Assembly: GCF_000143415.4 (NCBI RefSeq)
Contig: NW_003314263.1
Span: 3,668,451 to 3,732,450 of the forward strand
Reading direction: 5' to 3'
From: Selaginella moellendorffii
Lineage: Eukaryota > Plantae > Lycopodiophyta
DNA: 64,000 nucleotides
Below the pieces are notes generated by a model. The model made no database searches and was not told the DNA's origin. It worked only from the letters and a program-made list of their open reading frames with translations. Positions within the stretch are counted from its first letter, which is position 1, and each line of letters starts with the position of its first letter. Shown piece after piece: positions 34,201 through 62,250 of the stretch. Both the position numbers and the translations under genes were made by a program.

Positions 34201-34216
34201 TGAGTGGATGGAATAT

Positions 34217-34992: not shown

Positions 34993-36858
34993 ATGAAATG
35001 TATTGTGGTTTTGGTCTCACTTGTCCTTGCTTCCTTAATATGCATCAACGTTTGGGTTCCTAGAATGATAAAATCATCATCATCTCCTGGTTATTACTTT
35101 CCTGATCTCGCACAAGATCATGGTTCTACCTGCTGGGAGGCCAGTTACTACGCTATAAACAACGATCCATTCTACAAGTGGGCAACTGGCTCCTCACTTC
35201 CAATGGCACTTAAGCTCAACGAGAAAGGCACTCTTGGCTACCAGCGGGCAAGTGTATGGAGAATCTCTGGAATGAAAGATGCCCGATCGAATGGTACAAG
35301 CATGTTCAACTCTCCAGATCCCCACGTTCTAGGAGGAGTCCTTCACCGTGTAAGTAAAGGTTTGGCTTGGGAGATGTCTATCAACTGGGGGATGAGTGTT
35401 CGACTCTGCATCACTTTGCCCAGAACGACTGGCGAGCCGTGTCTCTTCACTGCTCCTGTAGTTTGGACAAACAAGCTCCATGCAAATGGTACGGGCTCTT
35501 ATGCGGTCCTCATGGTGGGCGTTCCGTACAGAAAGGCCTCGTCAGACATGTTTTCGGTTAGCAGCAGCTCCCTGTATTTGCCCTGGGGAGATTACTTGAC
35601 CAACTTTGCGAGTAACGCTAGAACTCAACTTGGGCTCACGCTTGACAAAGACAAGGGAAACAACGTTAACAAGTATGTGTACCAAGGAAACGTATGTGAA
35701 GCATCCAAGCCCGTTTTCATTATTCCGGATGTAATATCGTATTTGGGATTTCCAACCCATCAGTGTGGCTGTGATGGGAACGTTTGCATCATTGACAGCA
35801 ACTTGACGCTGCTGTCAGATTCGGACCAAGGCATATCTCCTTTGAAGCTGAATTCTACAAGCTGTAGTAGCAGGACTTCCACTCTTTGGAATCTTGAGGG
35901 CATTCCAACGTTCTCTACATACAGCCTCAAACGAAACGGATCATTCACTTTTGAAGTGACATTTAGCTCTGGTTCAGCTGTAAATTTTTCAGAGGCGATG
36001 AAGGACGTTAACTATGGGATCATAAAGAACGTAAGCTCGTGTGTTCAGGGATGGCTGGAGCAACACCCGGTTGAAAAACCTCTTACAACCATCTCCCAGG
36101 ACTGTTCCCTTCAAGGCATCGCAAACGTTGATTATTCTCACAGCGGTCAAATGATATTTCGATTCCCACTTGCTGCATCGGGGATGAGAGCGACGTTTGA
36201 TTATAAAGTTCCCATTGGCAACACACAAGAGGACGTCTACTGTGGCATGGATCAAGGACAAGTAGCACTGAGCCAGAACTTGTGCATGCTAAACATGACG
36301 AAGCTCAAGTCCTCGGGAGAAATGTCAATGCTAGCACAGCAACTGGATGTCTTTGCAAACGTTGCGGACATAAAGAGGTTCGCCCTCAAGGAATGGGAGA
36401 AGGGGTCTTCAAAGAGAGCTGAAGTTCTCTTTGAGATCTTGGTGGCGATCTTCACGATCGGGGCCACAATCTGGGGAATGTTTGCCAAGTCATCGGAGAA
36501 CTTTGAGAAGTCGCTCATCAGATTTGTTTGGACAGAGTTTCAACTTTCAGTGCTTAGAACATTTGCACGGGCCTTAATCCTCATTGGAGTGATGATATGG
36601 AACACATTCAGCATATTTCAGATGATCAAAGAGGTGGAACTAAAGCGTTGTCTTGCCACCTCTGGAACAATCATCCAGCCGTTGAACGGTATCAGCTTTT
36701 TGGTCACCACCACCTCCACTATTGAAGTGATGCCCAGGTGGTCAATCTTATTTTGGGTGTGCTCACTGGAATTTGTTATCTTTGTGGCAGCAGTAGTTCT
36801 AATCTTTCATAGAATGCGCAAATCCGAAGAGCTTAAGACAGCAGAGATCAACTTGTAA
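34993..36858 (+). CDS. Uncharacterised intronless 4TM protein with large Cys-rich extracellular loop (divergent paralog, 621 aa)
   Basis: N-terminal hydrophobic anchor and three C-terminal hydrophobic helices. Shares motifs STCWEA, DPFYxW, GTLxYQRASxWR, SPDPHxLGG, GVPYRKAS, YVYxGxVC, CxCDGNxC and CGMDxGQ with the ORFs at 54169 and 60307. Confidence 0.85.
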   Translation: MKCIVVLVSLVLASLICINVWVPRMIKSSSSPGYYFPDLAQDHGSTCWEASYYAINNDPFYKWATGSSLPMALKLNEKGTLGYQRASVWRISGMKDARSNGTSMFNSPDPHVLGGVLHRVSKGLAWEMSINWGMSVRLCITLPRTTGEPCLFTAPVVWTNKLHANGTGSYAVLMVGVPYRKASSDMFSVSSSSLYLPWGDYLTNFASNARTQLGLTLDKDKGNNVNKYVYQGNVCEASKPVFIIPDVISYLGFPTHQCGCDGNVCIIDSNLTLLSDSDQGISPLKLNSTSCSSRTSTLWNLEGIPTFSTYSLKRNGSFTFEVTFSSGSAVNFSEAMKDVNYGIIKNVSSCVQGWLEQHPVEKPLTTISQDCSLQGIANVDYSHSGQMIFRFPLAASGMRATFDYKVPIGNTQEDVYCGMDQGQVALSQNLCMLNMTKLKSSGEMSMLAQQLDVFANVADIKRFALKEWEKGSSKRAEVLFEILVAIFTIGATIWGMFAKSSENFEKSLIRFVWTEFQLSVLRTFARALILIGVMIWNTFSIFQMIKEVELKRCLATSGTIIQPLNGISFLVTTTSTIEVMPRWSILFWVCSLEFVIFVAAVVLIFHRMRKSEELKTAEINL

Positions 36859-36927
36859 TGAATAAATATTTGGTGTGTGTTTGTGGATTATCAGAATATA
36901 TATTTAAGGAGAAACTAAATTATTGTA

Positions 36928-39003: not shown

Positions 39004-39009
39004 GGCTTT

Positions 39010-42390: not shown

Positions 42391-42789
42391 CAGGCAAAAC
42401 ACATGTGGTGATAAGAACATTCCACAGTCTCAGGTGCTTGATCTCAGGCAACTCTTGAAGTTGAAATGCTTCCAGGCAATAAATTGCGAGTTTTCTTTTC
42501 CCACGATAATTACAGCTTTGCAGCTAGATTTAGGAACTGGAGCACAGTGGATTCAGTTAAACGTATCCATTGCCAAAGCATAAATGAGATGTTAGACCTT
42601 TTCTCGTAGTAGAAACACGCCCAGCGTAACGAGACGGGAAGGAAACCTGTTGAGTACAAGCACAAGGAAAAAAGCAAACCGCTGATTGTCATACCTCTTC
42701 GTCATGGTGATTGTTCTGCACATTTAAGACGTTCGCAGGAAGCAGCAAATAATTCGGCCTCATCTGGGTGTCAGCACACGAGCAGTTTA

Positions 42790-43870: not shown

Positions 43871-45169
43871 GATGCCAAGCGAGCCAAGAACGTTTTATTG
43901 TGTGGAGAGAATTTTGTTTTAAAAGTAAACATTTAATATTTATGAAAAGATAATAACTACAATTCAAGAACAAAGCCAAGAGGGAAAATAATAGTACTAT
44001 GTCCGTCTCAATCTCAACATCAACAAGTAATCACAAAAACCACTGAGTGGCAAAAATCAAAACTAAAAGCATATACTGTTGCATGGATTGGTTCATATGC
44101 ATGTTGCTGCAAGATTCTCTTTGATCCTAACCCTTGTTATGGACAACAGCATATGTTTGATTCCATGTTGCCAGACTCGGCATGACACTATATCGCCAAC
44201 TGCAAGGGCCAGTCTTCTTTGGTATGCCCTATCGCTGTCACCAAGGCATTCCAAGTCGCTATACTCCACTTAGAACAAGCCTCGTCCGACTTCAAGCCGC
44301 TCACATTGACCATCGAGCACAGTCCTTGTCAAAGTAGCGTTTTGTGTCTAGAAGACGATTCTCAGCATTATCTTGCTGAGGGCTCTGAACTTCCCTACTC
44401 CACAGCTCCCAAGAGAGAGCATCGTCGCCCAGATCCACGCCGATGGCTGTTCTTCGCGTGTCGCCTCGCGCCCATTCTGCCCTGCTCATGAAAAGCCTTG
44501 CATTGTGCTTGTTTGCATGCTCGTAAGTCCCATTCTCTTGTTTTGTTTCTCTTTAATGTTCTCCAGGCCGAATCAATGAAGCCAAGCAAAGTGTAACCAC
44601 AAGTTGACTCGGCTTTCTAATGCTTCTGGTGGGCCAGATCTTTAGCGCAACGTTCGAGTTTTCAGACGTCCATAAAACACAAAACCAATGAAGAGTCTAG
44701 CAAATGAAATAAAAGGAAGAGATAGAGATTCTTTCATGACTGCAAGCTGTATGTCGTCTATGGATGCTATGCTTTTTGGTGGAGAATGTGGCTGCTTCTA
44801 TTCCAATCGCTTGGGCAGTCCACCTAGTGTCGTAAATTATGAATATGGTTCTCTCACATTTTACACGCTTTGAAATGTTTATGGTATTTGGACTATTGCT
44901 TTGAGTTTCTATGGTACACCACATCTTAGATATATTATACTTAATTTCAGAAATATAAGACTATCAATAAGGGGGTGTCTTCAAAACCGAATGTGCATTT
45001 TGCTTTATAAAAAGAAAGTATGACTAAAGTGAATATGAAAAGAAAGAAGAATAAAGCTTGAAGTCGATACTTAGCATTTGGATCTTTGCTTTTCGGGCTA
45101 GTGTTTCTTTTGCAGTGTACCCCTTTCATTTTAACCTTGAATTTCGCTTGGAAGCACAGTTCTCCAGTT

Positions 45170-45600
45170 ATTTCATGCGAATGTACACACCAAAAGTAAC
45201 TGAAAAATACAAATTAGATTGCAATGTTGAGGTTGTAGTCGCTAGGAACGAGATCCCATTGAGCTGCTGGAGAAGTGTTTCTGAAGTGGCAAGGCGAGGC
45301 TCACAAGCCTTTATGAACACGTCACACCCACGAGCACAAACACTCCCATCTTAAACAATGGAAGTCCCACAACTTTGGTGACCTTTTACGATCAAACTTC
45401 TTGCAACTCCCTCATGACAATCCTAATAGTAATCCTTGATCTCTCTGCCGAAGTGCTCTCCCTTCTTTACAAACCTATGCGTCTGCTCTTAAAGCTTGTG
45501 CCGCCCAAGGTCAGGTGGCAAGGTGGCGCAGAGGATTTTCTAATGATGCCTGGAGGAATTTGCTATCGGGCATCCGCAGTTGTGACCCAAGAGGATCATG
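45170..45600 (-). pseudogene. Heavily deleted relic of the 4TM family (C-terminal part)
   Basis: gttgaggttgtagtcgctaggaacgagatcccattgagctgctggag...gtggcaag and cttaaacaatggaagtcc match 54308-54490. Confidence 0.75.
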
Positions 45601-46146
45601 GAATGACAGCGTAGGTAGTATATAAGCTAGTGTTTGAGAATTCGTGAGGCAGGCTGGTGCTCCTTAGGAGTTCGAATTCCCCAAGCTGGGATGTCTTTGA
45701 GAGTAGATACGAGAGAGTGATCATCTTGAGGCTTTCTGTCATCTGTATAAGTGGCTCGAGTTGGTTGTTGAGATTAGAGAGAATTGACCTGAATTTCATG
45801 GAGATTGTCGTGCAAATTTGAGAGCGTTCGCAGGAAGCAGCAAATAGTTCGGCCTCAGCCTGTGCACAGCGTACAAGAAGTCTGAAGCAGTTCATCTTGC
45901 AATAACACCACCAAAGCAGCGGTTGCTCGTTCTCCGGAAACAAGTCAATGTTCTTAGACCGCAGGAAGAGATCCTGGTATAACATCGAAGTTGTAGTTGT
46001 TCTCGCTCTTCATTTCCATGGTCTTTCCCTTCCGCAATAGAGTCTTGTGCATCCTGTGTTGCATGGCTGTGGTTCGATCCACCAACGTTGACGCCTCCAC
46101 TTCCAGCAAGCTCATGACAGAAGCATTAGCCAAGTCAACTAGTGGT

Positions 46147-47178
46147 TTAACTTTGTTTGACTTCCTTGATCTGAGAGATTGTGTTTTTGGTCACCAAGTT
46201 CCATGCGGGCATAGTGACAAGGAAAAGCTTCGCTTCCTCCAAAGACTTGGCATGCCCAATCGCTGCCAACAAGGCATTCCAAGTCACTATGCTCCGCTCG
46301 GGCATCTCCACAAACAAGTCTTGTGCAATCTCAAGCCGCTCGGATTGAGCATATGAAACGACGAGCACAGTCCACGGCACAAGATTCCATGCTGGCATCT
46401 TGTCAAAGTAGCTCTTTGCCTTGTCTAGAAGACGATTCTCGGCATATCCCTGGAGCAATGCCGTCCATGAGAAGACGTTCCTCTCCGGCATATTCTCGAA
46501 CAAGGCACACGCCTCTCTGTCATTGCCCCTCGCGGCAAATGCCGAAACCATTGCAGTAGCTGATATAGTGTCATGCTGGGGCATCTTTCGAAACAATCCT
46601 CGAGATGCTAAGATACCTCCGAGTCTTGCATATCCAGCAAGCATTGATGTCCATGCAATTGCATTGCGAGGTGACATAGAATCAAACATATGCTTCGCGC
46701 TACACATATACCCGCTTTGAGCATATGCTGTAAGCATTGTCGTCCACGAAACAATGTTGGGATTTGGAATCGAATCAAAAAGAATCTTTGCCTCGTCTAC
46801 ATGCCCGTGTTGTGCGTACGCTGCAAGCATTGTATTCCATGCAACAGTATCCCGATCGGGCATCTCGTCAAAGATAAGCTTAGCATCTTGCAGATACCCG
46901 TTTTGGGTATATGCAGTCATCATAACAGCCCACGAGAAAACGTTCTTAGCGTCGATGGCGTCAAACACTCGCTTGGCATCATTTGGGCTACCGCATTTGC
47001 CATACATCTGGACGAGCAAATTGGCCAGGAAGACGTTCTCTCTGTATTCCTTTTGATCTGAAATAATCTGGCTGTGTATCCAGCGACCCTTTGCCAAGTC
47101 CTTGGATTTGGCACAGTGGCGAATCACGGTTGCGAAGTCTTCAATGGCGTGGCTGGCTGTTCTCTTGAGAGCACTCAT
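46147..47178 (-). CDS. Short PPR protein (343 aa, mostly ~31-aa S-type repeats, no E/DYW)
   Basis: Tandem FDxMPxRxxxxWxxMLxxYAQxG repeats in an open frame. The C-terminus stops abruptly, so it may be non-functional. Confidence 0.75.
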   Translation of the reverse strand: MSALKRTASHAIEDFATVIRHCAKSKDLAKGRWIHSQIISDQKEYRENVFLANLLVQMYGKCGSPNDAKRVFDAIDAKNVFSWAVMMTAYTQNGYLQDAKLIFDEMPDRDTVAWNTMLAAYAQHGHVDEAKILFDSIPNPNIVSWTTMLTAYAQSGYMCSAKHMFDSMSPRNAIAWTSMLAGYARLGGILASRGLFRKMPQHDTISATAMVSAFAARGNDREACALFENMPERNVFSWTALLQGYAENRLLDKAKSYFDKMPAWNLVPWTVLVVSYAQSERLEIAQDLFVEMPERSIVTWNALLAAIGHAKSLEEAKLFLVTMPAWNLVTKNTISQIKEVKQS

Positions 47179-49975: not shown

Positions 49976-50429
49976 AGCTCCAAACTTCTCTGCTTAAACA
50001 AATTATGCGGTGCATACTTGTTGGATTTGGAATAGAAGTTTATATAGAAAGGTTACTAACTTTTTTGTAAGTGGTGAATAAAGTGATTATTCCCTTTGCA
50101 TAGTGGCAGTACGTGAAAATTCTTTGTATGAACGTTGATTGATTGATTGAATTGATTGGCAACAACAACGAACGACGATGGAAAATTATGCCTATTCTAC
50201 ATGATCTTTCCCCTCCTGTAATAACAATAAGTATTGCTGTGATCTTATATAAAACTTGGTACAAATACTGTAAACATCTTATTAATGAACATAAAGGTAC
50301 TACTATAAAACATATAATGGATCAATTCTGGTCGTCGTCGCGGACGTGCACGAATGTGCTCCCTCTGTTCCCTCCCTATGAGGTATTTCTCACCATATTT
50401 ATTTAAAGCTAGCTAAAAAATATAAATTC

Positions 50430-51231
50430 TAGCGTTCCATCCCGAGCACATTTCCCTCCCGCCGAGAGATCCAAGGTCCCAGTCCGTGGATTCCTACGGT
50501 CGCAGCCTCCAGTTTAGCGTTGCGTCTGGAAACCTCTTGAGCTGGAGAGTCCCTGCCGAGTGTGTTCCCTACGTCCGGAGCTACACCACCGGGCCACAGT
50601 ACCAAGCCGACGTCCAAGCTGCAACGAGCTTGGCACTCCAGCAAGCCCAGACTTTCTGCGCCAGGCCGGCATTGATGCGTGGCTGTTTGATGTCGATGGT
50701 ACTCTGCTCTCAACCACGCCTTACTTTGCTACAAAGCAGTTCGGGTAACGTCTGGATCTATCTCTTCCTTCCCTGTTGAAAGTTAAAATTTTGCAGAGCT
50801 GGGAGCTACCACGACACTGACTTTAACTTGTGGGCCGCCAGAGGCGTCGGCCCGGCGATCGCTCCAGTGAGGACGCTTCTCAGAACGAACTGGACAGTGT
50901 TCCTCGTGTCCACACGCCCATAGTCACTGCGGCGTGCGACTGTGAGGAACTTACTCCGGGCGGGCTACAGAGGCTGGAAGAGGCTCTTCATGAGGTTTGT
51001 GAGCTTCAGATAACGATGGCTAGCCTGTCATGACGCCAAATGCTACTCTTGCTAGACGACCACTCTTCCAGACTCAAGACGAGAACCTTGTTGGAAAAAA
51101 GAAAGCAAACAAACTGTCCAGGGGTTTGGCCTGGGTATGACACCAAGGGAGCAACGAGCAACAAGAAAGACACAGGTGGTGACAAGAGCATTCCACAGTC
51201 TCAGGTGCCTGATCTCTCGGGTAACAAATAA
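50430..51231 (+). pseudogene. HAD-IIIB acid phosphatase pseudogene (5'-truncated, frameshifted)
   Basis: Lacks the signal-peptide start, has a 1-bp deletion at ~50666 before DAWLFDVDGT, and has deletions in exons 2 and 3. Confidence 0.85.
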
Positions 51232-52309
51232 AACTCAAGCAATACAATGCAAGAAACATACCTCAATAATAATGCAGATTTGGATTGTTAGAAAAAGAGT
51301 AATAATTGAAACTAGTACCTCTTTCTTTCACCACGATCACCACGATGGACACAGATATAGTTTTATCCGTTTACATGTTGGCTTTCACGTTGAATTTCGT
51401 TGCAATCTTCTGACCAAGCATACGATCCGCCTGCACACTTTCATGGTTGAGTTTGATCACATGTTGTATTTTCTTTATTGTCTAACCTGAGACCAGTAAG
51501 AGAGCCAGATGCTACGGATTTCGTGGGTGACGCGCGGGTCGGACAGAGCATCCACAACTCTCGCAATGAAACGCTCTTGCCTGGAAATGGAGCAGAGATT
51601 CAGTTAAAACATGACTAGCTGAGAGAGAGGTTTGAGATCTTGCCTGTCAGCAGGCCAGGAGCGGAACATTGCTCCTGGCTGAGCAAAGTTATTTTCCTTT
51701 TCAATCATCACCTACAAGAGAAAAACATTATTGCCAAAGCATAAAATGAGAAGCTGAAACTTAGACTAGCCAAACCTTTTATCGTCGACCACCGAGAGGG
51801 TGAGAAGGAATAGGCACTCGCTCAGCGTGACGGCAAGGATCAAAATGCGAAGGGGTTAGTTCACCTGCAAACACAGAATATAGAACGTAAAAGCAAGAGC
51901 GTTGCTTGTCATACCTCTTCGTCCCTGTGGGTGAAGTTCATGAATCCCTCGTGATGGTTGTTGTGATGAGCACACTTGGGAGCGTTCGCAGGAAGCAGCA
52001 AATAGTTCGACCTCAGCCTGTGCACAGCGTACAAGAAGTCTGTAGCAGTTTATCATTGCAATAACACCACCAAAGCAGTGGTTGCTCGTTCTCCAGAAAC
52101 AACTCAATGTTCTTAGACCACGGGAAGAGATCCTGGTATAACATCGAAGTTGTAGTTGTTCTCGCTCTTCATTTCCATGGTCTTTCCCTTCTGCAATAGA
52201 GTCTTGTGCATCCTGCGTTGCATAGCTGTGGTTCGATGCACCAACGATGACGCCTCCTCTTCCAGCAAGCTTGACAGAAGCATTAGCCAAGTCAACTAGT
52301 GGTATCACT

Positions 52310-53090
52310 TTATTTGACTTCCTTGATCTGAGAGATTGTGTTTTTGGTCACCAAGTTCCATGCGGGCATAGTGACAAGGAAAAGCTTCGCCTCCTCCAAA
52401 GACTTGGCATGCCCAATCGCTGCCAACAAGGCATTCCAAGTCACTATGCTCCACTCGGGCATCTCAACAAACAAGTCTTGTGCAATCTCAAGCCGCTCGC
52501 ATTGAGCATATGAAACGACGAGCACAGTCCACGACACAAGATTCCATGCTGGCATATTGTCAAAGTAGCTCTTTGCCTTGTCTAGAAGACCATTCTCGGC
52601 ATATCCCTGGAGCAATGCCGTCCAATAGAAGACATTCCTCTCCGGCATATTCTCGAACACGCCTCTCTGTCATTGCCCCCTCGCGGCAAATGCCGAAACC
52701 ATTGCAGTAGCTGCATGGACGTCAATGCTTGCTGGATACGCAAGACTCGGAGGTGTCTTAGCCTCTTGAGGATTCTTTCGAAAGATGCCCCAGCATGACA
52801 CTCTATCACAATTGCATTGCGAGGTGACATAGAATAAAACCCACGAAACAATGTTGGGATTTGGAATCGAATCAAACAGAATCTTTGCCTCCTCTACATG
52901 GCCGTGTTGTGCGTACGCTCCAAGCATTGTATTCCACGCAACGGTATCCCGATCGGGCATCTCGTCAAACATAAGCTTAGCATCTTGCGGATACCCGTTT
53001 TGGGCATATGCAGTCATCATAACTGCCCACGAGAAAACGTTCTTGGTGTCGATGGCGTCAAACACTCGCTTGGCATCATTTGGGCTACCG
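52310..53090 (-). pseudogene. PPR pseudogene (cassette 2) with internal micro-inversion and replaced 5' end
   Basis: Paralog of 46147-47178. 52712-52808 is inverted, there are deletions, and the N-terminus is replaced by foreign sequence at 53091-53228. Confidence 0.88.
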
Positions 53091-54168
53091 CTACAGCGAG
53101 CGCCAGTTCCAGAACCTGCTCCTGGCTGCCTACGCCCAGCACCTGACGGTGAGCATATATGTGGCGCCCTCAGAGCGTGCTAAGATGGAATAAACTGGCG
53201 TCGCTCCACTCGCTGCTCCACTCGCCCGCTCATTAGAACGGCATTCTACACTACTAGTTTTATAAAAGACTTATTCTCTTTTGCCCTCTTGGATACAAAA
53301 AAATTGATCATAGGTCACGATACTGAAGTAAGTTTTACAAATGCATTTCAAAATTTATTTCATAAAACTATTTGATTAATGTGCTATTGCTGCGTTGAAA
53401 GACGCAATCATCCCTTGACCCGCAAGAGCAGAGCTCAAGAGAAATAGAAAGTAGATCCACTCCTACGAATTTTGCGGCGAACAGCTTGAAACTATGAGCA
53501 CAAAAAGACCAGCCCCTGAGATTTTTTGGCGATTCGCACTACAACTGAACACCTGCACTGTATTGCTATGATAGTAAATTATTGTTATTCGGATGGGGCT
53601 GATATAAGAGCACCAGTGTGCCATGTCATGGTCGGGAATCTTCAAAAACACCCGGTGGTGCTGCAATCAAGCACGAGAGCTGGCTGTATGCAACCTCTAT
53701 TCCACGGATGCTTGGAATCGTTGCTTTCAAGTACAATAGATAAAGACTGCTTCATGAAAGCAAACTGTATGCCTTAGACAAGCAAAAGCTATACACATTC
53801 CAGATACCAAAAGCAGATACTCTACATAGCACGGCCACGGCCTACCTCTACGAGGAAGAAAAAGGCACGGCAGAGCTGGCTGTAAGTAACTTATATTCCA
53901 AAGACGGATGCTTGGAATCATTGCTTTCAAATACAATAGATAAAGGCTGCATCATGGAAGCAAGCTGTATGCCTTAGAAAAGCAAAAGCTATACAAATTC
54001 CAGATACCAAAAACATGTGACACATGAGAGATAGCATGAAATTGAGTGGATTGCCACTTTTTAGTTACTTTCACTTTAATCAGTTTCTCTTTTTCTTGAG
54101 CTCTATCTATATCCAATTTTTGTGGCACTCATCAAACAATACATATTAATTGTATAAACTTGCATGAT

Positions 54169-56103
54169 TTAAGCTGGTGCAATTACTTCTTCTTTTCTTT
54201 CCACGTAGCGCATGCGAACGTACACACCGAAAGTTACTGTGGCAAACACAAAGATTGCAAACGAGCACGCTGCAAAGAAGATAATCCAAGATGGAGTGAC
54301 TTGAACTGTTGAAGTTGTAGTCACCAAGAACGAGATCCCGTCGAGCTGCTGGAGTAGTGTTTTTGAGGTGGCAAGCCGGGGCTCACTTCCCACAGCATTC
54401 AAGCTGACAAACACGTTAAACATGTTCCACACGATCACACCCAAGAGCAGAAAACCCCGAATTCCCGTCTTAAACAGTGGAAGTCCTATTGTCGCTTCCA
54501 CAACCCTGGTGAATTTGCCTGCGCGCTTCAAGATCAACGCCTCCACCTCTTGCAAATCCCTGTTGAACATCCCCCAGATGGTCACAAGGATGGTCACCAC
54601 TGCTGTGACAATCCCGACAGTTATGTCTGATCTCTGCGACGAAGTGCTCTCCCATTCCTTCTTCACGAACCTATGCACGTCCGCCACCTTTAGAGACTCC
54701 CTCAAGCGCTTCTCCAGCTTTTGCATCTCGTTTGAGCTCTTTAGATCCTGCAAGCTTACCGTGCACAGCTTGTCCGCCAGTTTTGACTGGCCTTCGTCCA
54801 TGCCACACAAGAAGTTGTCGTCCTTGTCACTTGGAACCTTGTAATTGAAGGTGTCCATGAGACCTTCCAGCGAGACCCGAGATCGGTATCTTCTCACAGC
54901 GACTCTTCTGTTAAAGGCAGGGCTCACGGCAACAATTGGACTTTTCAAGCACTTCTGCAGATCTGACACTAGTGTGTCATCGCTCGGAGCCTTCTTCTGG
55001 ATCGTGTCCTCAGTGCAAGAAACAAAGTATTTGAGTATCTGGTTGGGACCAAAGATTACCACATCGAATGTTGTGCTGAAATTCACCTGGAGTAGTATCG
55101 ATGTCTCCCGACTCGGGCTGTAAGAGTAGAAGATGGCTCTATTCTCTTCCAAAGGATACCTATCGTAATCCCAAAACGAATTGCCCTGGCCACACCCGGA
55201 GGCATTTAGTTTCAGAGGAAAAATATCATCCTCATTCGAAGCTGTGCCAGTGATGTTCAGACCCACAAGGCAAAGGTTACCATCGCAAGCGCACTGGAAG
55301 CTTGGAAAACCCATGTAAGAAACCACGTCCGGGGTGACGAGGATCGGGGAGGCCCTGTTGCAAACCTGGCCTTCGTAGACGTAGTTCTTGATTCCTTTGC
55401 CAGAGCTTTTGAGCTTCAATCCAGCACCGGTTCTAGCGTTGCTCACAAAGTTTGTCAAATACACCGCACTATTGTCCAGATACAAAGCGCTGCTCTCCAC
55501 GGCATATGGTTCCTGTGAAGCCTTCCGATACGGAACGCCAACCAAGAGCGCTGCATATGATCCAGGAGCGGTCTGGACGATCGGGGTTGTGTAAAGACAC
55601 GAATCATCCTTGGATCCTGGCAAGGTGAAACAAGTTCTTACACTCATCCCCCAGTAGACTGTCATCTTCCACACCAGAGTCCTGCTTCTCTTGACAAGCT
55701 CTCCTCCAAGAATGCGGGGATCTGGCGAGCTATACAAAGAGCTCTCATTTGTAGAGGTGATATTGCCCGAAACACGCCAGATGCTGGCCCTCTGGTATGC
55801 AAGCGTTCCCCTCTGGGAGACGTCAAGAGCATCCGGGAGTGAGGAATCAGAGACCCACTGATAGAATGGATCAGAGCTTGTGGCAAAGACGGTGGCTTCC
55901 CAGCAAGTAGAGCACATGTCCTCCTTGACGATATCCGGGTAGTAATCCCCTGGAGGTGGCTTGCTCATCTCTGGAACCGCGAATATGGCAGTGACCACAA
56001 GTGTCGCCACGAAAGTTGCAAATGCGATGCCAATCACAAGCGCTCCAGTGAGTTTCTCCCTTGGATTCAACATCAGTTTAGCTGCGCCTTGTGACTCTGC
56101 CAT
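54169..56103 (-). CDS. Uncharacterised intronless 4TM protein with large Cys-rich extracellular loop (644 aa)
   Basis: Intact ORF. TM1 LVIGIAFATFVATLVVTAIFAV; several N-x-S/T sequons (NIT, NES, NAS, NFS); TM2-4 ITVGIVTAVVTILVTIWGMF, GFLLLGVIVWNMFNVFVSL and WIIFFAACSFAIFVFATVTFGVYV. Confidence 0.88.
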   Translation of the reverse strand: MAESQGAAKLMLNPREKLTGALVIGIAFATFVATLVVTAIFAVPEMSKPPPGDYYPDIVKEDMCSTCWEATVFATSSDPFYQWVSDSSLPDALDVSQRGTLAYQRASIWRVSGNITSTNESSLYSSPDPRILGGELVKRSRTLVWKMTVYWGMSVRTCFTLPGSKDDSCLYTTPIVQTAPGSYAALLVGVPYRKASQEPYAVESSALYLDNSAVYLTNFVSNARTGAGLKLKSSGKGIKNYVYEGQVCNRASPILVTPDVVSYMGFPSFQCACDGNLCLVGLNITGTASNEDDIFPLKLNASGCGQGNSFWDYDRYPLEENRAIFYSYSPSRETSILLQVNFSTTFDVVIFGPNQILKYFVSCTEDTIQKKAPSDDTLVSDLQKCLKSPIVAVSPAFNRRVAVRRYRSRVSLEGLMDTFNYKVPSDKDDNFLCGMDEGQSKLADKLCTVSLQDLKSSNEMQKLEKRLRESLKVADVHRFVKKEWESTSSQRSDITVGIVTAVVTILVTIWGMFNRDLQEVEALILKRAGKFTRVVEATIGLPLFKTGIRGFLLLGVIVWNMFNVFVSLNAVGSEPRLATSKTLLQQLDGISFLVTTTSTVQVTPSWIIFFAACSFAIFVFATVTFGVYVRMRYVERKEEVIAPA

Positions 56104-56378
56104 AGCTCCAATCTTCTCTGCTCAAACAGATTATGCGGTGGATATTCGTTGCATTGAAATAAAAGTTCAAATGGAAAGTTTACTTTAATATATCTTGTAA
56201 GTAAATGGCGAATAAAGCGATTATTCCCTTTGCATAATGATAGTACCTGAAAATTCTTTTGAACATGGCAGCGCAGAATGTAGTAGTCCCTTTATATTGA
56301 TTAATACAAAGCTTATATCATGCTTTTTAATAACAACGCCTATTAAGTCGTCCATCTCGAGAAACTTTCATAGTCACA

Positions 56379-57299
56379 ATGGTTTCTCTTCTTCCTATTG
56401 CTCGTCTTCTTCTTGTTCTTCTTCTTTCATCTCTTGATCTTACCTTCTCAATCGAGCTCGCTGGTGTGCTAAATCCCGAGGACATTTCCCTCCCGCCGAG
56501 AGATCCAAGGTCCCAGTCTGTGGATTCCTATTGTCGCAGCTTCCAGTTTAGCGTTGCGTCTGGAAACCTCTTGAGCTGGAGAGTCCCTGCCGAGTGTGTT
56601 CCATACGTCCGGAGCTACACCACCGGGCCACAGTACCAAGCCGACGTCCAAGCTGCAACGAGCTTGGCACTCCAGCAAGCCCAGACTTTCTGCGCCAGGC
56701 CCGGCATTGATGCGTGGCTGTTTGATGTCGATGGTACTCTCCTCTCAACCACGCCTTACTTTGCTACAAAGCAGTTCGGGTAACGTCTGGATCTATCTCT
56801 TCCTCCCCCTGTTGAAAGTTAATACTTTGCAGAGCTGGGAGCTACAACGACACTGACTTTAACTTGTGGGCCGCCAGAGGCGTCGCCCCGGCGATCGTTC
56901 CAGTGAGGACCTTCTACCGGACGCTTCTCAGGACAAACTGGACAGTGTTCCTCGTGTCCACTCGCCCAGAGTCACTGCGGCGTGCGACTGTGAGGAACTT
57001 ACTCCGGGCGGGCTACAGAGGCTGGAAGAGGCTCTTCATGAGGTTTGTGAGCTTTAGATAACGTTGGCTAGCCTGTCATGACACCAGATGCTACTCTTGC
57101 TAGACGACCACTCTTCCAGACCCAAGACGAGAACCTTGTTGAAATAAAGAAAGCAAACAAACTGTCCAGGGGCTCGGCCGAGAAATCGATGAAAGATGCT
57201 GGGTATGACACCAAGGGAGTAACGAGCAACAAGCAAGACACAGGTGGTGACAAGAGCATTCCACAGTCTCAGGTGCCTGATCTCTCGGGTAACAAATAA
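56379..57299 (+). CDS. Secreted HAD class IIIB acid phosphatase/VSP-like protein with non-homologous last exon
   Basis: Signal peptide; SYCRSFQFSVASGNL..W.VPAECVPYV..Y..GPQYQAD; motif I DAWLFDVDGTLLS. Exons 56379-56779, 56833-57042 and 57104-57299 (inferred splicing). Confidence 0.8.
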
Positions 57300-58383
57300 A
57301 ACTCAAGCAATACAATGCAAGAAACATACCTCAATAATAATGCAGATTTGGATTGTTAGAACAAGAGTAATAATTGAAACTAGTACCTCTTTATTTCACC
57401 ACGATCACCACGATGGACACAGATATAGTTTTATCCGTTTACATGTTGGCTTTCACGTTGAATTTCGTTGCAATCTTCTGACCAAGCGTACGATCCGCCT
57501 GCACACTTTCATGGTTGAGTTTGATCACATGCTGTATTTTCTTTATTGTCTAACCTGAGACCAATAAGAGAGCCAGATGCTACGGATTTCCTGGGTGACG
57601 CGCGGGTCGGACAGAGCATCCACAACTCTCGCAATGAAACGCTCTTGCCTGGAAGTGCAGCAGAGATTCAGTTAAAACATGATTAGCTGAGAGAGAGGTT
57701 TGAGATCTTGCCTATCAGCAGGCCCGGAGCGGAACCTTGCTCCTGGCTGAGCAAAGTTATTTTCCTTTTCAATCATTGCCAAAGCATAAAATGAGAGGCT
57801 GGAAGTTAGACTAGCCAAACCTTTTCTCGTCGACCACCGAGAGGGTGAGAAGGAATATGCACTCGCTCAGCGTGACGGCAAGGATCAAAACGCGAAGGGA
57901 AATAGTTCACCTGCAAACACAGAATATAGAACGTAAAAGCAAGAGCGTTGCTTGTCATACCTCTTCGTCCCTGTGGGTGAAGTTCATGAATCCCTCGTGA
58001 GATGAGCACACTTGGGAGCATTCGCAGGAAGCAGCAAATAGTTCGGCCTCAGCCTGTGCACAGCGTACAAGAAGTCTGTAGCAGTTTATCATTGCAATAA
58101 CACCACCAAAGCAGCGGTTGCTCGTTCTCCGGAAACAACTCAATGTTCTCAGACCGCGGGAAGAGATCCTGGTATAACATCGAAGTTGTAGTTGTTGTCG
58201 CTCTTCATTTCCATGGTCTTTCCCTTCTGCAATAGAGTGTTGTGAATCCTGCGTTGCATAGCTGTGGTTCGATCCACCAACGATGACGCCTCCTCTTCCA
58301 GCAAGCTTGACAGAAGCATTAGCCAAGTCAAGTAGTGGTTTCACTTTGTTTGACTTCCTTGATCTGAGAGATCGTGTTTTTAG

Positions 58384-59366
58384 TCAGTTCCATGCGGGCA
58401 TAGTGACAAGGAAAAGCTTCGCCTCCTCCAAAGACTTGGCATGCCCAATCGCTGCCAACAAGGCATTCCAAGTCACTATGCTCCGCTCGGGCATCTCAAC
58501 AAACAAGTCTTGTGCAATCTCAAGCCGCTCGCATTGAGCATATGAAACGACGAGCACAGTCCACGACACAAGATTCCATGCTGGCATCTTGTCAAAGTAG
58601 CTCTTTGCCTTGTCTAGAAGACGATTCTCGGCATATCCCTGGAGCAATGCCGTCCATGAGAAGACGTTCCTCTCCGGCATATTCTTGAACAAGGCACACG
58701 CTTCTCTTGCATTGCCCCTCGCGGCAAATGCCGAAATCATTGCAGTAGCTGATATAATGTCATGCTGGGGCATCTTTCGAAAGAATCCTCGAGAGGTTAA
58801 GATACCTCCGAGTCTTGCATATCCAGCAAGCATTGATGTCCATGCAATTGCATTTCGAGGTGACATAGAATCAAACATATGCTTCGCGCTACACATATAC
58901 CCGCTTTGGGCATATGCTGTAAGCATTGTTGTCCACGACACAAAGTTGGGATTTGGAATCGAATCAAAAAGAATCTTTGCCTCGTCTACATTGCCATGCT
59001 GTGCGTACGCTCCAAGCATTGTATTCCATGCAACAGTATCACGATCGGGCATCTCATGAAAGATAAGCTTAGCATCTTGCGGATACCCGTTTTGGGTATA
59101 TGCAGTCATCATAACTGCCCACGAGAAAACGTTCTTGGCGTCGATGATGTCAAACACTCGCTTGGCATCATTTGGGCTGCCGCATTTGCCATACATCTGG
59201 ACGAGCAAATTGGCAGGAAGACGTTCTATCTGTAGTCCTTTTTATCTGAAATGATCTGGCTGTGTATCCAGCGACCCTTTGCCAAGTCCTTGGATTTGGC
59301 ACAGTGACGAATCACGGTTGCGAAGTCTTCAATGGCGTGGTTGGCTGCTCTCTTGAGAGCACTCAT
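58384..59366 (-). pseudogene. PPR pseudogene (cassette 3)
   Basis: ATG at 59366 as in cassette 1. A 1-bp deletion at ~59214 (ttggcagg vs ttggccagg) shifts the frame, and a small deletion at ~58386 creates an early stop. Confidence 0.85.
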
Positions 59367-60306
59367 TAGAACGGCATTCTACACTACTAGTTTTATAAAA
59401 GATCCATTCTCTTTTGCCCACTTGGATAAAAAAAATTGATCATAGGTCACGATACTAACTATTGCTGCGTTGAAAGACGCAATCATCCCTGGATATAATT
59501 CTTAAACCACACACATTATGTGGGGCTGTTTGTGGTCATAGTCTGAAGCTGTTCGCCGCAAAATTCGTAGGAGTGGATCTACTTTCTATTTCTCTTGAGC
59601 TCTGCTCTGGAGGGTGATGAGATTGTTATTTGGCTCGGACTGATATCAGAGGTCGTTAAAACTCCTCAGGCACCAGGAGGAGACAAAACTTCACTCCACC
59701 AGTGTGCTCCATGGTCGGGAATCTTCAAAAACACCCGGTGGTGGGCTGAGAAATTCTCTTAAATCCACATTCATGCAACAAGAGTTATCATATACGGTTA
59801 GAAGAGAACATTGAGCAGCATAGCATAGAAGCTATGGCAATGTACGAGGAAGGAAAAAGGCGCGGCGAATGCAATCAAGCACGAGAGCTGGCTGCAAAGA
59901 CGGATGCTTGGAACTGTTGCTTTCAAATACAATAAAGACTGCTTAGCTGGAATCGTTGCTTTCAAATACAATACATAATGACTGCTTAGCTGTATGCCTT
60001 AGAAAAGCAATAGCTATACACATTCCAGATACCAAAAGCATGTAACACATGAGAAGATACTCTACATAGCATGAGATTGAGTGGGTTGCCACTTTTTAGT
60101 TACTTTCATTTTAATCAGTTTCTCTTTTTCCTGAGCTCTATCTATATCCAATTTTTGTGGCACTCATCAAACAATACATATTAATTGTATAAACTTGCAT
60201 GATTTAAGCTGGTACAGTTACCTCTTCTTTTCTTTCCAAAGAAAAGAAGAGCTCTATCTATATCCAAATTTTGTGGCATCCAAGAATACATATTAATTAG
60301 CATGAT

Positions 60307-62250
60307 TTAAGCTGGTATAGTTACCTTTTCTTTTCTTTCCACGTAGCGCATACGAACGTACACACCGAAAGTTACTATGGCAAACACAAAGATTGCAAAC
60401 GAGCACGCTGCAAATAAGATAATCCAAGATGGAGTGACTTGAACTGTTGAAGTTGTAGTCACCAAGAACGAGACCCCGTCGAGCTGCTGGAGTAGTGTTT
60501 TTGAGGTGGCAAGCCGGGGCTCACTTCCCACAGCATTCAAGCTGACAAACACGTTAAACATGTTCCACACGATCACACCCAAGAGCAGAAAACCCCGAAT
60601 TCCCGTCTTAAACAGTGGAAGTCCTATTGTCGCTTCCACAACCCTGGTAAATTTGCCTGCGCGCTTCAAGATCAACGCCTCCACCTCTTGCAAATCCCTG
60701 TTGAACATCCCCCAGATGGTCACAAGGATGGTCACCACTGCTGTGACAATCCCAACAGTTATGTCTGATCTCTGCGACGAAGTGCTCTCCCATTCCTTCT
60801 TCACGAACCTAAGCACGTCCGCCACCTTTTGAGACTCCCTCAAGCGCTTCTCCAGCTTTTGCATCTCGTTTGAGCTCTTTAGATCCTGCAAACTTACCGT
60901 GCACAGCTTGTCCACCAGCTTCGACTGGCCTTCGTCCATGCCACACAAGAAGTTGTCGTCCTTGTCGCTTGGAACCTTGTTATTGAAGGTGTCCATGAGA
61001 ACTTCCAGCGATGCCCGAGATTGGTGTCTTCCCACAGCGGATGTTCTGCCAAAGGGAGGGCTCACGGCAACAATTGGATCTCTCAAGCACTCCTTCAGAT
61101 CTGCCACCAGTGTGGTATCGTTCGGAGCCTTCTTCTGGATCGTGTGCTCGGTGCAAGAAACGAAATCTTTGAGTCGCTGGATCGTGTCCTCGGCACCAAA
61201 GATTACCCAATTGAATCTTATGCTGAAATTTACCTGGAGTAGTATCGATGTGTTCCATGTCGGGCTGTAAGAGTAGAAGATGGTTCTATTCTCTTCCAAA
61301 GGATAGATATCGTAATCCCAAAACGAATTGCCCTGGCCACACCCGGAGGCATTTAGTTTCAGAGGAAAAATATCATCCTCATTCGAAGCTGTGCCAGTGA
61401 AGTCCAGACCCACAAGGCAAAGGTTACCATCGCAAGCGCACTGGAAGCTTGGAAAACCCATGTAAGAAACCACGTCCGGGGTGACGAGGATCGGGGAGGC
61501 CCTATTGCAAACCTGGCCTTCGTAGACGTAGTTCTTGATTCCTTTGCCAGAGCTTTTGAGCTTCAATCCTGCACCGGTTCTAGCGTTGCTCACAAAGTTT
61601 GTCAAATACACCGCACTATTGTCCAGATACAAAGCGCTGCTCTCCACGGCATATGGTTCCTGTGAAGCCTTCCGATACGGAACGCCAACCAAGAGCGCCG
61701 CATATGATCCAGGAGCGGTCTGGACGATCGGGGTTGTGTAAAGACACGAATCATCCTTGGATCCTGGCAAGGTGAAACAAGTTCTTACACTCATCCCCCA
61801 GTAGACTGTCATCTTCCACACCAGAGTCCTGCTTATCTTGACAAACTCTCCTCCAAGAATGTGGGGATCTGGCGAGCTATACAAAGAGCTCTCATTTGTA
61901 GAGGTGATATTGCCCGAAACACGCCAGATGCTGGCCCTCTGGTATGCAAGCGTTCCCCTCTGGGAGACGTCAAGAGCATCCGGGAGTGAGGAATCAGAGA
62001 CCCACTGGTAGAATGGATCGGAGCTTGTGGCAAAGACGGTGGCTTCCCAGCAAGTAGAGCACATGTCCTCCTTGACGATATCTGGGTAGTAATCCCCTGG
62101 AGGTGGCTTGCTCATCTCTGGAACCGCGAAGATGGCAGTGACCACAAGTGTCGCCACGAAAGTTGCAAATGCGATGCCAATCACAAGCGCTCCAGTGAGT
62201 TTCTCCCTTGGATTCAACATCAGTTTAGCTGCGCCTTGTGACTCTGCCAT
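60307..62250 (-). CDS. Uncharacterised intronless 4TM protein with large Cys-rich extracellular loop (647 aa)
   Basis: Intact ORF, close paralog of 54169-56103. Confidence 0.88.
   Translation of the reverse strand: MAESQGAAKLMLNPREKLTGALVIGIAFATFVATLVVTAIFAVPEMSKPPPGDYYPDIVKEDMCSTCWEATVFATSSDPFYQWVSDSSLPDALDVSQRGTLAYQRASIWRVSGNITSTNESSLYSSPDPHILGGEFVKISRTLVWKMTVYWGMSVRTCFTLPGSKDDSCLYTTPIVQTAPGSYAALLVGVPYRKASQEPYAVESSALYLDNSAVYLTNFVSNARTGAGLKLKSSGKGIKNYVYEGQVCNRASPILVTPDVVSYMGFPSFQCACDGNLCLVGLDFTGTASNEDDIFPLKLNASGCGQGNSFWDYDIYPLEENRTIFYSYSPTWNTSILLQVNFSIRFNWVIFGAEDTIQRLKDFVSCTEHTIQKKAPNDTTLVADLKECLRDPIVAVSPPFGRTSAVGRHQSRASLEVLMDTFNNKVPSDKDDNFLCGMDEGQSKLVDKLCTVSLQDLKSSNEMQKLEKRLRESQKVADVLRFVKKEWESTSSQRSDITVGIVTAVVTILVTIWGMFNRDLQEVEALILKRAGKFTRVVEATIGLPLFKTGIRGFLLLGVIVWNMFNVFVSLNAVGSEPRLATSKTLLQQLDGVSFLVTTTSTVQVTPSWIILFAACSFAIFVFAIVTFGVYVRMRYVERKEKVTIPA

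What the first reader, a model, noticed from the sequence alone, without database searches (positions are those of the whole stretch)
34993..62250. Unrecognised intronless 4TM membrane-protein family with a giant Cys-rich first extracellular loop, in active birth-and-death
Seen: five homologs, namely 34993-36858 (+, divergent), the 45170-45600 relic, the 48071-49975 pseudogene, 54169-56103 and 60307-62250. The intact copies have an N-terminal anchor, a ~450-aa loop with conserved Cys and N-glycosylation sequons, and a helical stalk (KSSxEM...ADxxRFxxKEWE). TM2 and TM3 follow, then a short beta-like loop (RxATSxTxxQxLxGISFLVTTTSTxxV), TM4 and a ~12-aa tail. There is no kinase, LRR or lectin motif, and no introns in an intron-rich neighbourhood. 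I recognise no family. Inference: the topology (4 TMs, large loop 1, small beta-stranded loop 2) recalls claudin/SUR7-type tetraspan or large-pore channel proteins. It may be a lineage-specific surface receptor, adhesion protein or ligand-gated channel. Intronlessness raises retroposition or horizontal origin.
Basis: partly seen in the sequence, partly recalled or inferred. Interest (0 to 1): 0.85.

Follow-up and report, generated by a model that had tools for sequence, protein, structure and literature searches.

The report
Spikemoss-only four-pass membrane glycoprotein family
The spikemoss Selaginella moellendorffii carries a real, transcribed family of membrane glycoproteins with a large cysteine-rich outer domain. 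The family matches no known protein family or fold, and here it is being copied and broken in a tandem array; its function is unknown.

Summary
The window is Selaginella moellendorffii. It carries three intact homologous ORFs (A, C, D), one pseudogene with at least three frame breaks (B) and one C-terminal relic.

All family members share the same layout:
- an N-terminal anchor or signal peptide;
- a ~450-aa ectodomain with 12 conserved Cys, which holds nearly all N-glycosylation sequons;
- a juxtamembrane helix and three further hydrophobic segments;
- a near-invariant Thr-rich loop between the last two segments.

Stranded RNA-seq shows D transcribed antisense to the window, unspliced. Reads carrying C-specific bases show C is transcribed too. 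Outside one ectodomain patch (aa ~296-425, dN/dS 1.7-2.7), C and D are under purifying selection (dN/dS 0.29).

Copies B, C and D arose by DNA-level triplication of a 6.1-kb cassette (PPR, this gene, acid phosphatase), not by retroposition. Two deeper clades elsewhere in the genome carry short GT-AG introns.

An exhaustive HMMER search of 1.84 billion cluster representatives found only S. moellendorffii proteins, in five deep clades. Pfam, PDB, viral, metagenome and prokaryote searches were blank. AlphaFold models were poor (pLDDT 34 and 47), so no fold is assigned.

Claudin-like, channel-like and horizontal-origin readings remain unsupported. My best guess, at low confidence, is a cell-surface recognition protein.

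The parts
34993..36858 (+). Copy A: intact 621-aa ORF of the divergent clade (40% identical to D). Its N-terminus looks like a signal peptide.
   Evidence: The other haplotype's allele (L005) is 98.2% identical but carries a 1-nt deletion at window position 35442.
45162..45460 (-). Relic covering only the TM2-to-TM4 part (aa ~488-638).
   Evidence: tblastn, (36-52% identity). A matching relic lies on the other haplotype.
48074..49975 (-). Copy B: pseudogene with at least three frame breaks (near 49330, 48455 and 48300) and internal deletions.
   Evidence: four HSPs in different frames. It is 90.8% identical to D at the nucleotide level.
54169..56103 (-). Copy C: intact 644-aa ORF. It is transcribed, since RNA reads carry C-specific bases.
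60307..62250 (-). Copy D: intact 647-aa ORF.
   Evidence: (SELMODRAFT_404657).
60184..62266 (-). Transcript of D: unspliced, about 2.08 kb, with a very short 5' UTR and a ~120-nt 3' UTR.
   Evidence: In stranded raw reads the first mate lies on + only. There are no joints, flank depth is zero, and RNA contigs end at 60184 and at 62263-62266.
60976..61365 (-). Hypervariable ectodomain patch of D (aa 296-425). The equivalent in C lies at about 54840-55218.
   Evidence: dN/dS is 1.7-2.7 here against 0.29 elsewhere (D vs C). Fisher one-sided p=0.006 for D versus the haplotype-2 copy.
60310..60762 (-). Membrane module of D (aa 497-647): TM2, a K/R-rich cytosolic loop, TM3, a Thr-rich extracellular loop, TM4 and a basic tail.
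60427..60534 (-). Conserved loop between TM3 and TM4 (aa 573-608), modelled as a beta-hairpin. T585, Q588, L596 and T598-T600 are invariant.
   Evidence: strands 579-590 and 593-607; pLDDT 49-63 by 10-residue block.
45803..63896 (.). Three tandem copies of a ~6.1-kb unit (PPR gene, this gene, HAD-IIIB acid phosphatase). Units start near 45803, 51962 and 57998.
   Evidence: 12 repeat families, spacing 6032-6159 nt. Searches give the Pfam assignments of the neighbours.

Best explanation
These are real, transcribed genes of a protein family known so far only from Selaginella moellendorffii.

Each encodes a polytopic secretory-pathway glycoprotein. The parts are an N-terminal signal anchor (or signal peptide in some clades), a ~450-aa disulfide-rich, N-glycosylated ectodomain, an amphipathic juxtamembrane helix and a three-helix membrane module. 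The one exposed loop of that module is almost invariant.

The local copies arose by DNA-level triplication of a 6.1-kb three-gene cassette and are turning over. One is dead and relics remain.

My most likely functional reading is inferred, not shown. The protein would be a cell-surface recognition or adhesion receptor without an enzymatic cytosolic domain. The conserved N-terminal half of the ectodomain and the membrane module would form a fixed scaffold. The fast-evolving patch (aa ~296-425) would be the ligand-facing surface. Any output would pass through the membrane module or through partner proteins.

Shown: gene integrity, transcription, lack of splicing in D, the hydrophobic-segment pattern, the distribution of Cys and sequons, region-specific selection, the duplication mechanism, and the absence of detectable relatives.

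Inferred: membrane orientation, surface localisation, ligand binding, and any signalling.
For: - Integrity and copies.
- Species and annotation as hypothetical proteins.
- Transcription of D on the minus strand without joints, and of C through C-specific bases.
- Topology proxies: hydropathy. K/R-rich TM2-TM3 loop (4-7 K/R) and tail against a K/R-poor TM3-TM4 loop.
- Twelve conserved ectodomain Cys, and 4-13 sequons inside against 0-1 outside (0-2 counting the mis-fused model P0013).
- Purifying selection outside the patch: D vs C dN/dS 0.29, p=0.0015. Deep pairs give about 0.23-0.30, but dS is saturated.
- The patch has dN/dS above 1 in all three recent pairs, while its dS is not raised in two of them.
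- Tandem turnover typical of recognition genes.
- Five deep clades at unlinked loci show long retention.
Against: - No ligand, localisation or phenotype data exist.
- dN/dS above 1 in the patch is significant in only one of three non-independent pairs. It could reflect relaxed constraint on a loosely structured region.
- Overall dN/dS between the recent copies is 0.75-1.0.
- No known signalling domain is present, and the cytosolic parts are very short.
- The AlphaFold models are unreliable (pLDDT 34 and 47), so even the domain structure of the ectodomain is unknown.
- TM3 is only weakly hydrophobic, so the four-pass topology is not proven.
Confidence: 0.35

Rival explanations
1. It is an oligomeric ligand- or stimulus-gated ion channel. 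The TM1, Cys-rich ectodomain and TM2 layout copies the P2X/ASIC-ENaC architecture, and with few helices per subunit a pore would have to form by oligomerisation. The invariant Thr-rich loop and TM3/TM4 would add an outer vestibule.
For: - Topology proxies.
- The membrane module and loop are more conserved than most of the ectodomain.
- Conserved polar residues lie in or near the membrane segments: R552, E524 and the T598-T600 run.
- Weak, non-significant structural rows to pLGIC, connexin and LRRC8 membrane domains.
Against: - No Pfam hit to any channel family.
- Fold matches are at noise level (TM-score 0.27 or less, E>1, Z no higher than for designed helical bundles).
- Oligomerisation was not tested.
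- The fast-evolving patch and tandem turnover are unusual for channels.
Confidence: 0.12
2. It is a lumenal or apoplastic enzyme or processing factor, for example acting on wall or glycan substrates, that is anchored by several helices. The strongly conserved N-terminal half of the ectodomain would be a catalytic domain.
For: - The ectodomain stretch aa 46-295 is the most conserved large region.
- It holds invariant polar residues: E69, D78, Q104, R110, N218, R224, D259, and H130 nearly invariant.
- It is under purifying selection (dN/dS 0.24 for D vs C).
- The type-II-like N-terminal anchor is common among Golgi enzymes.
Against: - No hit to any enzyme family in Pfam or in the PDB by profile.
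- Three extra C-terminal helices and an invariant exposed loop are not typical of Golgi enzymes.
- Conserved enzymes are rarely confined to one lineage.
Confidence: 0.15
3. It is a domesticated envelope or fusion glycoprotein captured from a virus or an env-bearing retroelement. That would explain the orphan status, the single-exon structure, the stalk helix before the membrane anchor, and the Cys-rich glycosylated ectodomain.
For: - Architecture only.
- A, C, D and P0016 are single-exon genes.
Against: - No relative in 2.9 million IMG/VR contigs, in BFVD structures (best E=0.11, TM 0.12 or less), or in 1.84 billion representatives.
- The loci hold no gag, pol or other viral genes.
- Two clades carry GT-AG introns.
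- The five deep clades look like an old resident family.
Confidence: 0.06
4. The ORFs are decaying or non-functional, and the transcription is noise.
For: - Recent copies have an overall dN/dS of 0.75-1.0.
- One copy and one allele are broken.
Against: - 620-650-codon ORFs are kept open in five clades that differ by up to 74%.
- D vs C outside the patch shows 15 synonymous against 15 non-synonymous changes over 361 and 1190 sites (dN/dS 0.29, p=0.0015).
- 53 alignment columns are invariant.
- A clean strand-specific transcript matches the ORF.
Confidence: 0.03

Closest known systems
Claudin / PMP22 / SUR7 tetraspan superfamily
   Same: Four hydrophobic segments with both ends predicted inside. 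The first outer loop is larger than the second. The second loop is predicted as beta strands. A W..WG..C-x10-C stretch (aa 145-169) superficially recalls the claudin W-GLW-C-C signature.
   Different: Loop 1 is about 450 aa rather than about 50, and the motif lies more than 100 residues from TM1. There is no Pfam hit and no fold match. I do not file it as a member.
P2X and ASIC/ENaC channels (two-pass subunits with a large Cys-rich glycosylated ectodomain)
   Same: N-in TM1, a large disulfide-rich glycosylated ectodomain, then TM2. Conserved Cys number 10-14.
   Different: This family has two further membrane segments and a conserved loop. No sequence or fold similarity was found, and oligomeric state and conductance are unknown.
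Large-pore tetraspan channels (connexin, innexin/pannexin, LRRC8, CALHM)
   Same: Four segments with a beta-hairpin-like outer loop.
   Different: Those families have two short loops tied by inter-loop disulfides. Here loop 2 has no Cys and loop 1 is a whole multi-domain ectodomain. Foldseek rows to connexin 32 and LRRC8 have E>1.9 and TM 0.2 or less.
Plant receptor-like proteins and other tandemly arrayed surface recognition genes
   Same: Tandem birth-and-death, a conserved scaffold with a fast-evolving exposed patch, and short cytosolic parts. These are functional analogies only.
   Different: There are no LRR, LysM, lectin, malectin or kinase domains. The protein is multi-pass rather than single-pass. 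No homology was detected.
Viral envelope/fusion glycoproteins
   Same: Signal or anchor, a glycosylated Cys-rich ectodomain, a membrane-proximal helix and hydrophobic anchors.
   Different: No viral relative by sequence or fold, and the genes sit in ordinary cellular loci.

Membership tests
Claudin/PMP22/SUR7 superfamily | Pfam match (PF00822, PF13903, PF06687 and related models) | tested here: not met
   hmmscan of all 13 family members at E up to 10 returned none of these.
Claudin/PMP22/SUR7 superfamily | Four transmembrane helices with cytosolic ends | tested here: inconclusive
   Hydropathy and K/R distribution agree with this. TM3 is weak, and no dedicated topology predictor or experiment was available.
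Claudin/PMP22/SUR7 superfamily | A short (~50 aa) first loop carrying W-GLW-C-(8-10)-C next to TM1 | tested here: not met
   Loop 1 is about 450 aa. The look-alike WG..C-x10-C stretch lies at aa 151-169, about 105 residues after TM1.
Large-pore channels (connexin/pannexin/LRRC8/CALHM) | Two short outer loops with conserved Cys forming inter-loop disulfides | tested here: not met
   The TM3-TM4 loop contains no conserved Cys.
Large-pore channels (connexin/pannexin/LRRC8/CALHM) | Shared fold of the membrane domain | tested here: inconclusive
P2X / ASIC-ENaC | Pfam match (PF00864 / PF00858) and exactly two TM helices | tested here: not met
   There is no Pfam hit, and four hydrophobic segments are present.
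Viral envelope / fusion glycoproteins | Sequence or fold relative in viral collections, or a proviral context | tested here: not met
   The IMG/VR scan found none. BFVD best E was 0.11 with TM 0.12 or less. Neighbours are PPR, acid phosphatase, pseudouridine synthase, UDP-glycosyltransferase and similar genes.
Processed retrogene | Copy made through mRNA: a lone intronless insert with a poly(A) remnant or target-site duplication, and flanks not co-duplicated | tested here: not met
   B, C and D were duplicated together with their flanking PPR and acid-phosphatase genes as a 6.1-kb DNA unit. For the ancient split between intron-bearing clades (P0012, P0017) and intronless clades (P0016, A, C/D), the question cannot be tested at 26-40% identity.
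Horizontally acquired gene | Closer relatives in a non-plant donor lineage than in plants | tested here: not met
   No relative of any kind outside S. moellendorffii was found in 1.84 billion representatives, metagenome contigs or 185,579 prokaryote genomes.

The most novel reading that the evidence does not exclude
This would be a previously unknown class of plant cell-surface recognition protein: a four-pass, kinase-less glycoprotein with a new ectodomain fold. A defined patch of the ectodomain would be under diversifying selection, and tandem birth-and-death would tune the repertoire. It could be a lycophyte-specific solution to pathogen, symbiont or gamete recognition.
Probability: 0.2. 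Interest if true: 0.75.

Novelty: categorically new. Interest (0 to 1): 0.5.

Why it matters
Lycophytes are the sister group of all other vascular plants, and their lineage-specific genes are almost unstudied. This family is not a marginal orphan. It has at least five deep clades, 620-650 codons kept open, 12 conserved cysteines, an invariant membrane-proximal loop, clean transcription, and a local patch that evolves faster at non-synonymous than at synonymous sites.

If the ectodomain proves to be a new fold, or the membrane module a new signalling or pore unit, it would add a new membrane-protein architecture to plant biology. It would also give a tractable case of how a recognition-type gene family is born and turned over.

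If it proves to be a fast-evolving branch of a known family, it becomes an ordinary annotation gain.

"New" here means only that no relative and no assignable fold were found. No function has been shown.

Tried and rejected
**Sequence and profile searches, all blank**
- Pfam on A, C and D, then on all 13 aligned members at E up to 10. Only sub-threshold noise appeared (Peptidase_C25_C E=0.0015 in the A clade, Xlink 0.07).
- PDB by single sequence and by profile. The best row was uS19 at E=0.24, which is noise.
- ESM Atlas by features for D and for P0012. The best score was 0.75, below any useful level.
- Word-indexed searches with D, with profile A2 and with P0012 found only S. moellendorffii.
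- Exhaustive phmmer with copy A gave 9 hits, all S. moellendorffii.
- IMG/VR, JGI metagenome and GTDB genome scans with profile-derived patterns found nothing.

**Structure**
- Two AlphaFold2 runs gave pLDDT 34.3 and 46.7.
- Fold searches of the second model in PDB (Foldseek and VIA-align wide), the ESM Atlas and BFVD gave only generic helical bundles or noise.
- No fold claim is made in either direction.

**Literature**
- Locus tags and topic words found no paper on these genes.
- The supplements held for the Selaginella expression-atlas preprint do not list them.

**Earlier scan notes**
- Searches by words and by sequence were blank.

**Not run**
- No complex-prediction job was sent, because the report does not claim a specific interaction.

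**Handling of broken and spliced genes**
- Pseudogene B was compared only as separate tblastn pieces and was never read through.
For the intron-bearing clades I used the database proteins as supplied, and for dN/dS only exon 1, by reference.

Full report
**1. What is in the sequence**

The window comes from Selaginella moellendorffii. The ORFs correspond to GenBank hypothetical proteins on a 4.46-Mb scaffold: SELMODRAFT_404657 (D), 404654 (C), 404651 (a model built over B) and 404587 (A). Allelic or paralogous models lie on a 1.63-Mb scaffold, which I take to be the other haplotype.

ORF listing and tblastn confirm five homologs:
- A: 34993-36858 (+), 621 aa.
- Relic: 45162-45460 (-).
- B: 48074-49975 (-), split into four pieces in different frames.
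- C: 54169-56103 (-), 644 aa.
- D: 60307-62250 (-), 647 aa.

C and D are 92.6% identical in protein and 95.1% in DNA. A is 40% identical to both. No further copy lies elsewhere in the window.

**2. Anatomy**

Hydropathy gives one N-terminal and three C-terminal hydrophobic segments in every clade. In D these are at about aa 22-44, 497-516, 550-572 and 609-631. TM3 is the weakest, with a mean Kyte-Doolittle value of 1.0-1.5.

Charge distribution fits an N-in, big-loop-out, C-in orientation:
- The TM2-TM3 loop carries 4-7 K/R.
- The tail carries 2-8 K/R.
- The TM3-TM4 loop carries 1-4 K/R.

The large loop holds 12 conserved Cys columns, at D positions 67, 158, 169, 248, 271, 273, 278, 304, 366, 388, 436 and 450. 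It also holds 4-13 N-x-S/T sequons, against 0-1 in the rest of the protein, or 0-2 counting the mis-fused model P0013. This is what a lumenal or extracellular domain would show.

The N-terminal segment differs by clade:
- In C, D, P0009 and P0017 it is a long (22-26 residue) uninterrupted hydrophobic stretch preceded by K/R, which looks like a signal anchor.
- In A it starts at residue 4, which looks like a cleavable signal peptide.
- In the P0012 clade it has a Pro-broken h-region followed by small residues, which also looks like a signal peptide.

Across 13 members that share as little as 26% identity, 53 columns are invariant. They cluster in three places:
- the N-terminal half of the ectodomain (DPFYxW, YQxxSxWR, SPDPH..GG, WGxSxRxC, TxPIV, VPY, YLSNFxSNAR, QCxC);
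- the juxtamembrane stretch (W487, S491, R494);
- the TM3-TM4 loop (T585, Q588, L596, T598-T600, W609).

AlphaFold models that loop as a long beta-hairpin (strands 579-590 and 593-607) between two helices, at modest confidence.

**3. The genes are real and in use**

Two stranded raw RNA-seq runs laid on window 59900-62700 cover 60276-62343:
- The first mate lies only on the + strand. The neighbouring + strand acid-phosphatase gene shows the opposite orientation. The RNA of D is therefore sense to the minus-strand ORF.
- There are no joints, and depth in both flanks is zero.
- Contigs from two likely RNA assemblies end at 60184 and at 62263-62266.
- The transcript is therefore about 2.08 kb and unspliced, with a very short 5' UTR and a 3' UTR of about 120 nt.

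Of the 19 variant bases seen in those reads within D, 16 equal the base of copy C. Two of them (61862 and 62131) are found only in C among the copies compared, so C is transcribed too.

Selection:

| Comparison | Region | dN/dS | Notes |
|---|---|---|---|
| D vs C | outside aa 296-425 | 0.29 | 15 non-synonymous changes over 1190 sites vs 15 synonymous over 361; Fisher p=0.0015 |
| D vs C | aa 296-425 | 1.7 | patch dS 0.086 vs about 0.04 in the flanks |
| C vs haplotype-2 copy | aa 296-425 | 1.7 | patch dS similar to the rest |
| D vs haplotype-2 copy | aa 296-425 | 2.7 | one-sided p=0.006; patch dS similar to the rest |
| deep pairs (D vs A, C vs A, D vs P0016) | whole | 0.23-0.30 | dS saturated |

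In the two comparisons with the haplotype-2 copy, dS in the patch (0.085-0.094) is similar to the rest. The excess is therefore in replacement changes and is not simply older sequence. In D vs C the flanks have lower dS, so some homogenisation by gene conversion is possible.

It is not met.

**4. How the copies arose**

Direct-repeat analysis finds 12 families of 228-300-nt repeats, 10 of them in three copies, spaced 6032-6159 nt apart from about 45.8 kb to the end of the window. Each ~6.1-kb unit carries three genes:
- a PPR gene or its remains (46147-47178, about 52.3-53.1 kb, 58384-59208);
- one copy of this family (B, C or D);
- a HAD-IIIB acid-phosphatase gene on the other strand.

B, C and D are therefore products of DNA-level segmental duplication, with dS of about 0.05-0.09.

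Turnover is visible in several ways:
- B is dead, and a C-terminal relic precedes the array.
- The other haplotype has a differently built array: one intact 633-aa copy, a partial copy with a frame break and two relics.
- That haplotype's allele of A is 98.2% identical but has a 1-nt deletion inside the ORF. I cannot exclude an assembly error there.

**5. Introns, retroposition and horizontal origin**

- D is unspliced, and P0016 is a single exon.
- The P0012 clade has a 55-nt GT..AG intron at codon 565/566, which is needed to keep the frame.
- P0017 has a 60-nt GT..AG intron containing a stop, plus a second break near its C-terminus.

In a maximum-likelihood tree the order is (P0012 clade), (P0017, (P0009/P0016, (A, (C, D, haplotype-2 copy)))), with branch lengths of about 0.5-2.2 changes per site and strong support. 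The root is at the midpoint, for drawing only.

Intron loss on the branch to the intronless clades, or separate gains, are both possible. At this divergence no poly(A) tract or target-site trace could survive, so an ancient retroposition cannot be tested.

The neighbouring PPR genes are also single-exon ORFs. "Intronless in an intron-rich neighbourhood" is therefore a weaker oddity than it seemed.

The other family loci sit among ordinary plant genes: AMP deaminase, an MFS transporter, UDP-glycosyltransferase, pseudouridine synthase, aldose epimerase and a Myb gene. No viral or transposon genes lie beside them.

**6. Search for relatives**

An exhaustive phmmer search with copy A against 1.84 billion cluster representatives returned nine proteins, all from S. 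moellendorffii, down to 26% identity at E=6e-38. A homolog at similar distance in any annotated plant, alga, fungus, animal, microbe or metagenome in that library would have been seen.

Everything else was blank:
- word-indexed searches with D, with the family profile and with the most divergent member;
- Pfam on all members;
- PDB by sequence and by profile;
- ESM Atlas by features;
- IMG/VR, JGI metagenome and prokaryote genome scans.

One caveat applies. Few lycophyte proteomes are in these libraries, so "spikemoss-only" means "not found outside S. moellendorffii". It does not mean the family is absent from other Selaginella species. The depth of the five clades makes a wider distribution within the genus likely.

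I found no paper on these genes.

**7. Structure**

Two AlphaFold2 runs gave mean pLDDT 34.3 (10 close sequences) and 46.7 (13 sequences from five clades). Only aa ~320-400 and the C-terminal helices reached 60-79.

Fold searches with the second model returned nothing usable:
- ESM Atlas gave TM-scores of 0.27 or less.
- Foldseek against the PDB gave E of 0.77 or more.
- Foldseek against BFVD gave E of 0.11 or more, with TM 0.12 or less.

These results neither assign nor exclude a known fold.

**8. Most likely mechanism and rivals**

Probabilities below are for the functional reading. The descriptive part, a real, expressed, lineage-restricted polytopic glycoprotein family expanded by cassette duplication, I hold at about 0.9.

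- **Cell-surface recognition or adhesion protein (about 0.35).** The pattern is a fixed scaffold, one exposed patch with replacement changes in excess, tandem birth-and-death, haplotype differences and very short cytosolic parts. It is most like surface recognition genes. The patch would face the ligand, and the membrane module would anchor the protein or couple it to partners.
- **Anchored lumenal or apoplastic enzyme (about 0.15).** This rests on the strongly conserved, polar-residue-rich N-terminal ectodomain half.
- **Oligomeric channel of P2X/ASIC-like architecture (about 0.12).** This rests on topology, the conserved membrane module and the conserved Thr-rich loop.
- **Domesticated viral or retroelement envelope protein (about 0.06).**
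- **Non-functional ORFs (about 0.03).**

The remainder goes to functions I have not thought of.

**9. Comparison with known families**

The family shares only gross topology with claudin/PMP22/SUR7 tetraspans and with large-pore channels. It fails their testable defining features: a Pfam match, short loops, motif position and loop-2 cysteines. It shares the TM, Cys-rich ectodomain, TM layout of P2X/ASIC but has two more membrane segments and no sequence similarity. I file it under no known family.

**10. Earlier notes of this scan**

- Note s1-334493 describes a hypervariable patch at 54840-55165. It agrees with my region-wise dN/dS.
- Note s1-334564 describes the three-gene cassette. It agrees.
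- I re-derived both here, and neither changed my reading.

**11. Verdict**

The structural description is largely right. The channel or claudin analogy and the retroposition or horizontal-transfer inference are unsupported. The family is undescribed and unassignable with present tools. Its function is unknown, and recognition is my low-confidence best guess.

Noticed in passing
window 36928-39003 (+); 46147-47178 (-); 58384-59208 (-); about 52300-53100 (-): An intact 691-aa PLS-type PPR gene with an E motif lies 70 nt downstream of copy A. Each 6.1-kb unit carries a shorter PPR ORF or its remains (343 aa, degenerate, and 274 aa from a TTG start). The PPR copies therefore decay at different rates from the membrane-protein copies.
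   Followed up: partly
window 50329-51738, 56363-57806, 62465-63896 (+): HAD-IIIB acid-phosphatase genes (Pfam PF03767, E about 1e-17 on the first exon ORF) are co-duplicated in each unit. The third copy is transcribed more strongly than D in the same RNA runs (depth up to about 80, against about 10-30).
   Followed up: partly
window 6837-9296 (+) and 12936-15248 (+): Two long single-exon ORFs (819 and 770 aa) each have a central F-box and no other Pfam domain. They may be a local paralog pair.
   Followed up: no
window 18000-24800: This stretch has a strong AT skew (0.17-0.21). It holds long minus-strand ORFs with GTG starts (582, 306 and 205 aa) and no Pfam match.
   Followed up: no
window 2000-4000 and 30000-34400: AT-rich blocks (GC 0.29-0.32) lie here, with an 81-nt unit repeated twice at 34213-34377, just upstream of copy A.
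   Followed up: no
L005 10418-10491 and 11098-11166; L003 11885-11964: The old JGI gene models for these genes (P0008, P0003, P0001, P0002) contain short 'introns'. These remove conserved coding sequence or step over a frameshift. The window ORFs and the RNA data show they are annotation artefacts.
   Followed up: partly
protein P0013 (SELMODRAFT_427541) and P0022 (SELMODRAFT_419126): Members of the P0012 clade are annotated at 764 and 852 aa. In P0013 the extra length includes a subtilase-like fragment (Peptidase_S8, E=0.004), which is probably a mis-fusion with a neighbouring gene.
   Followed up: no
run X8 (organism B): A run filed under a different organism label from the main holders contains 42% of D's 31-mers. 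Two other species of the same study contain none. It may be a very close relative or a mislabelled sample.
   Followed up: no
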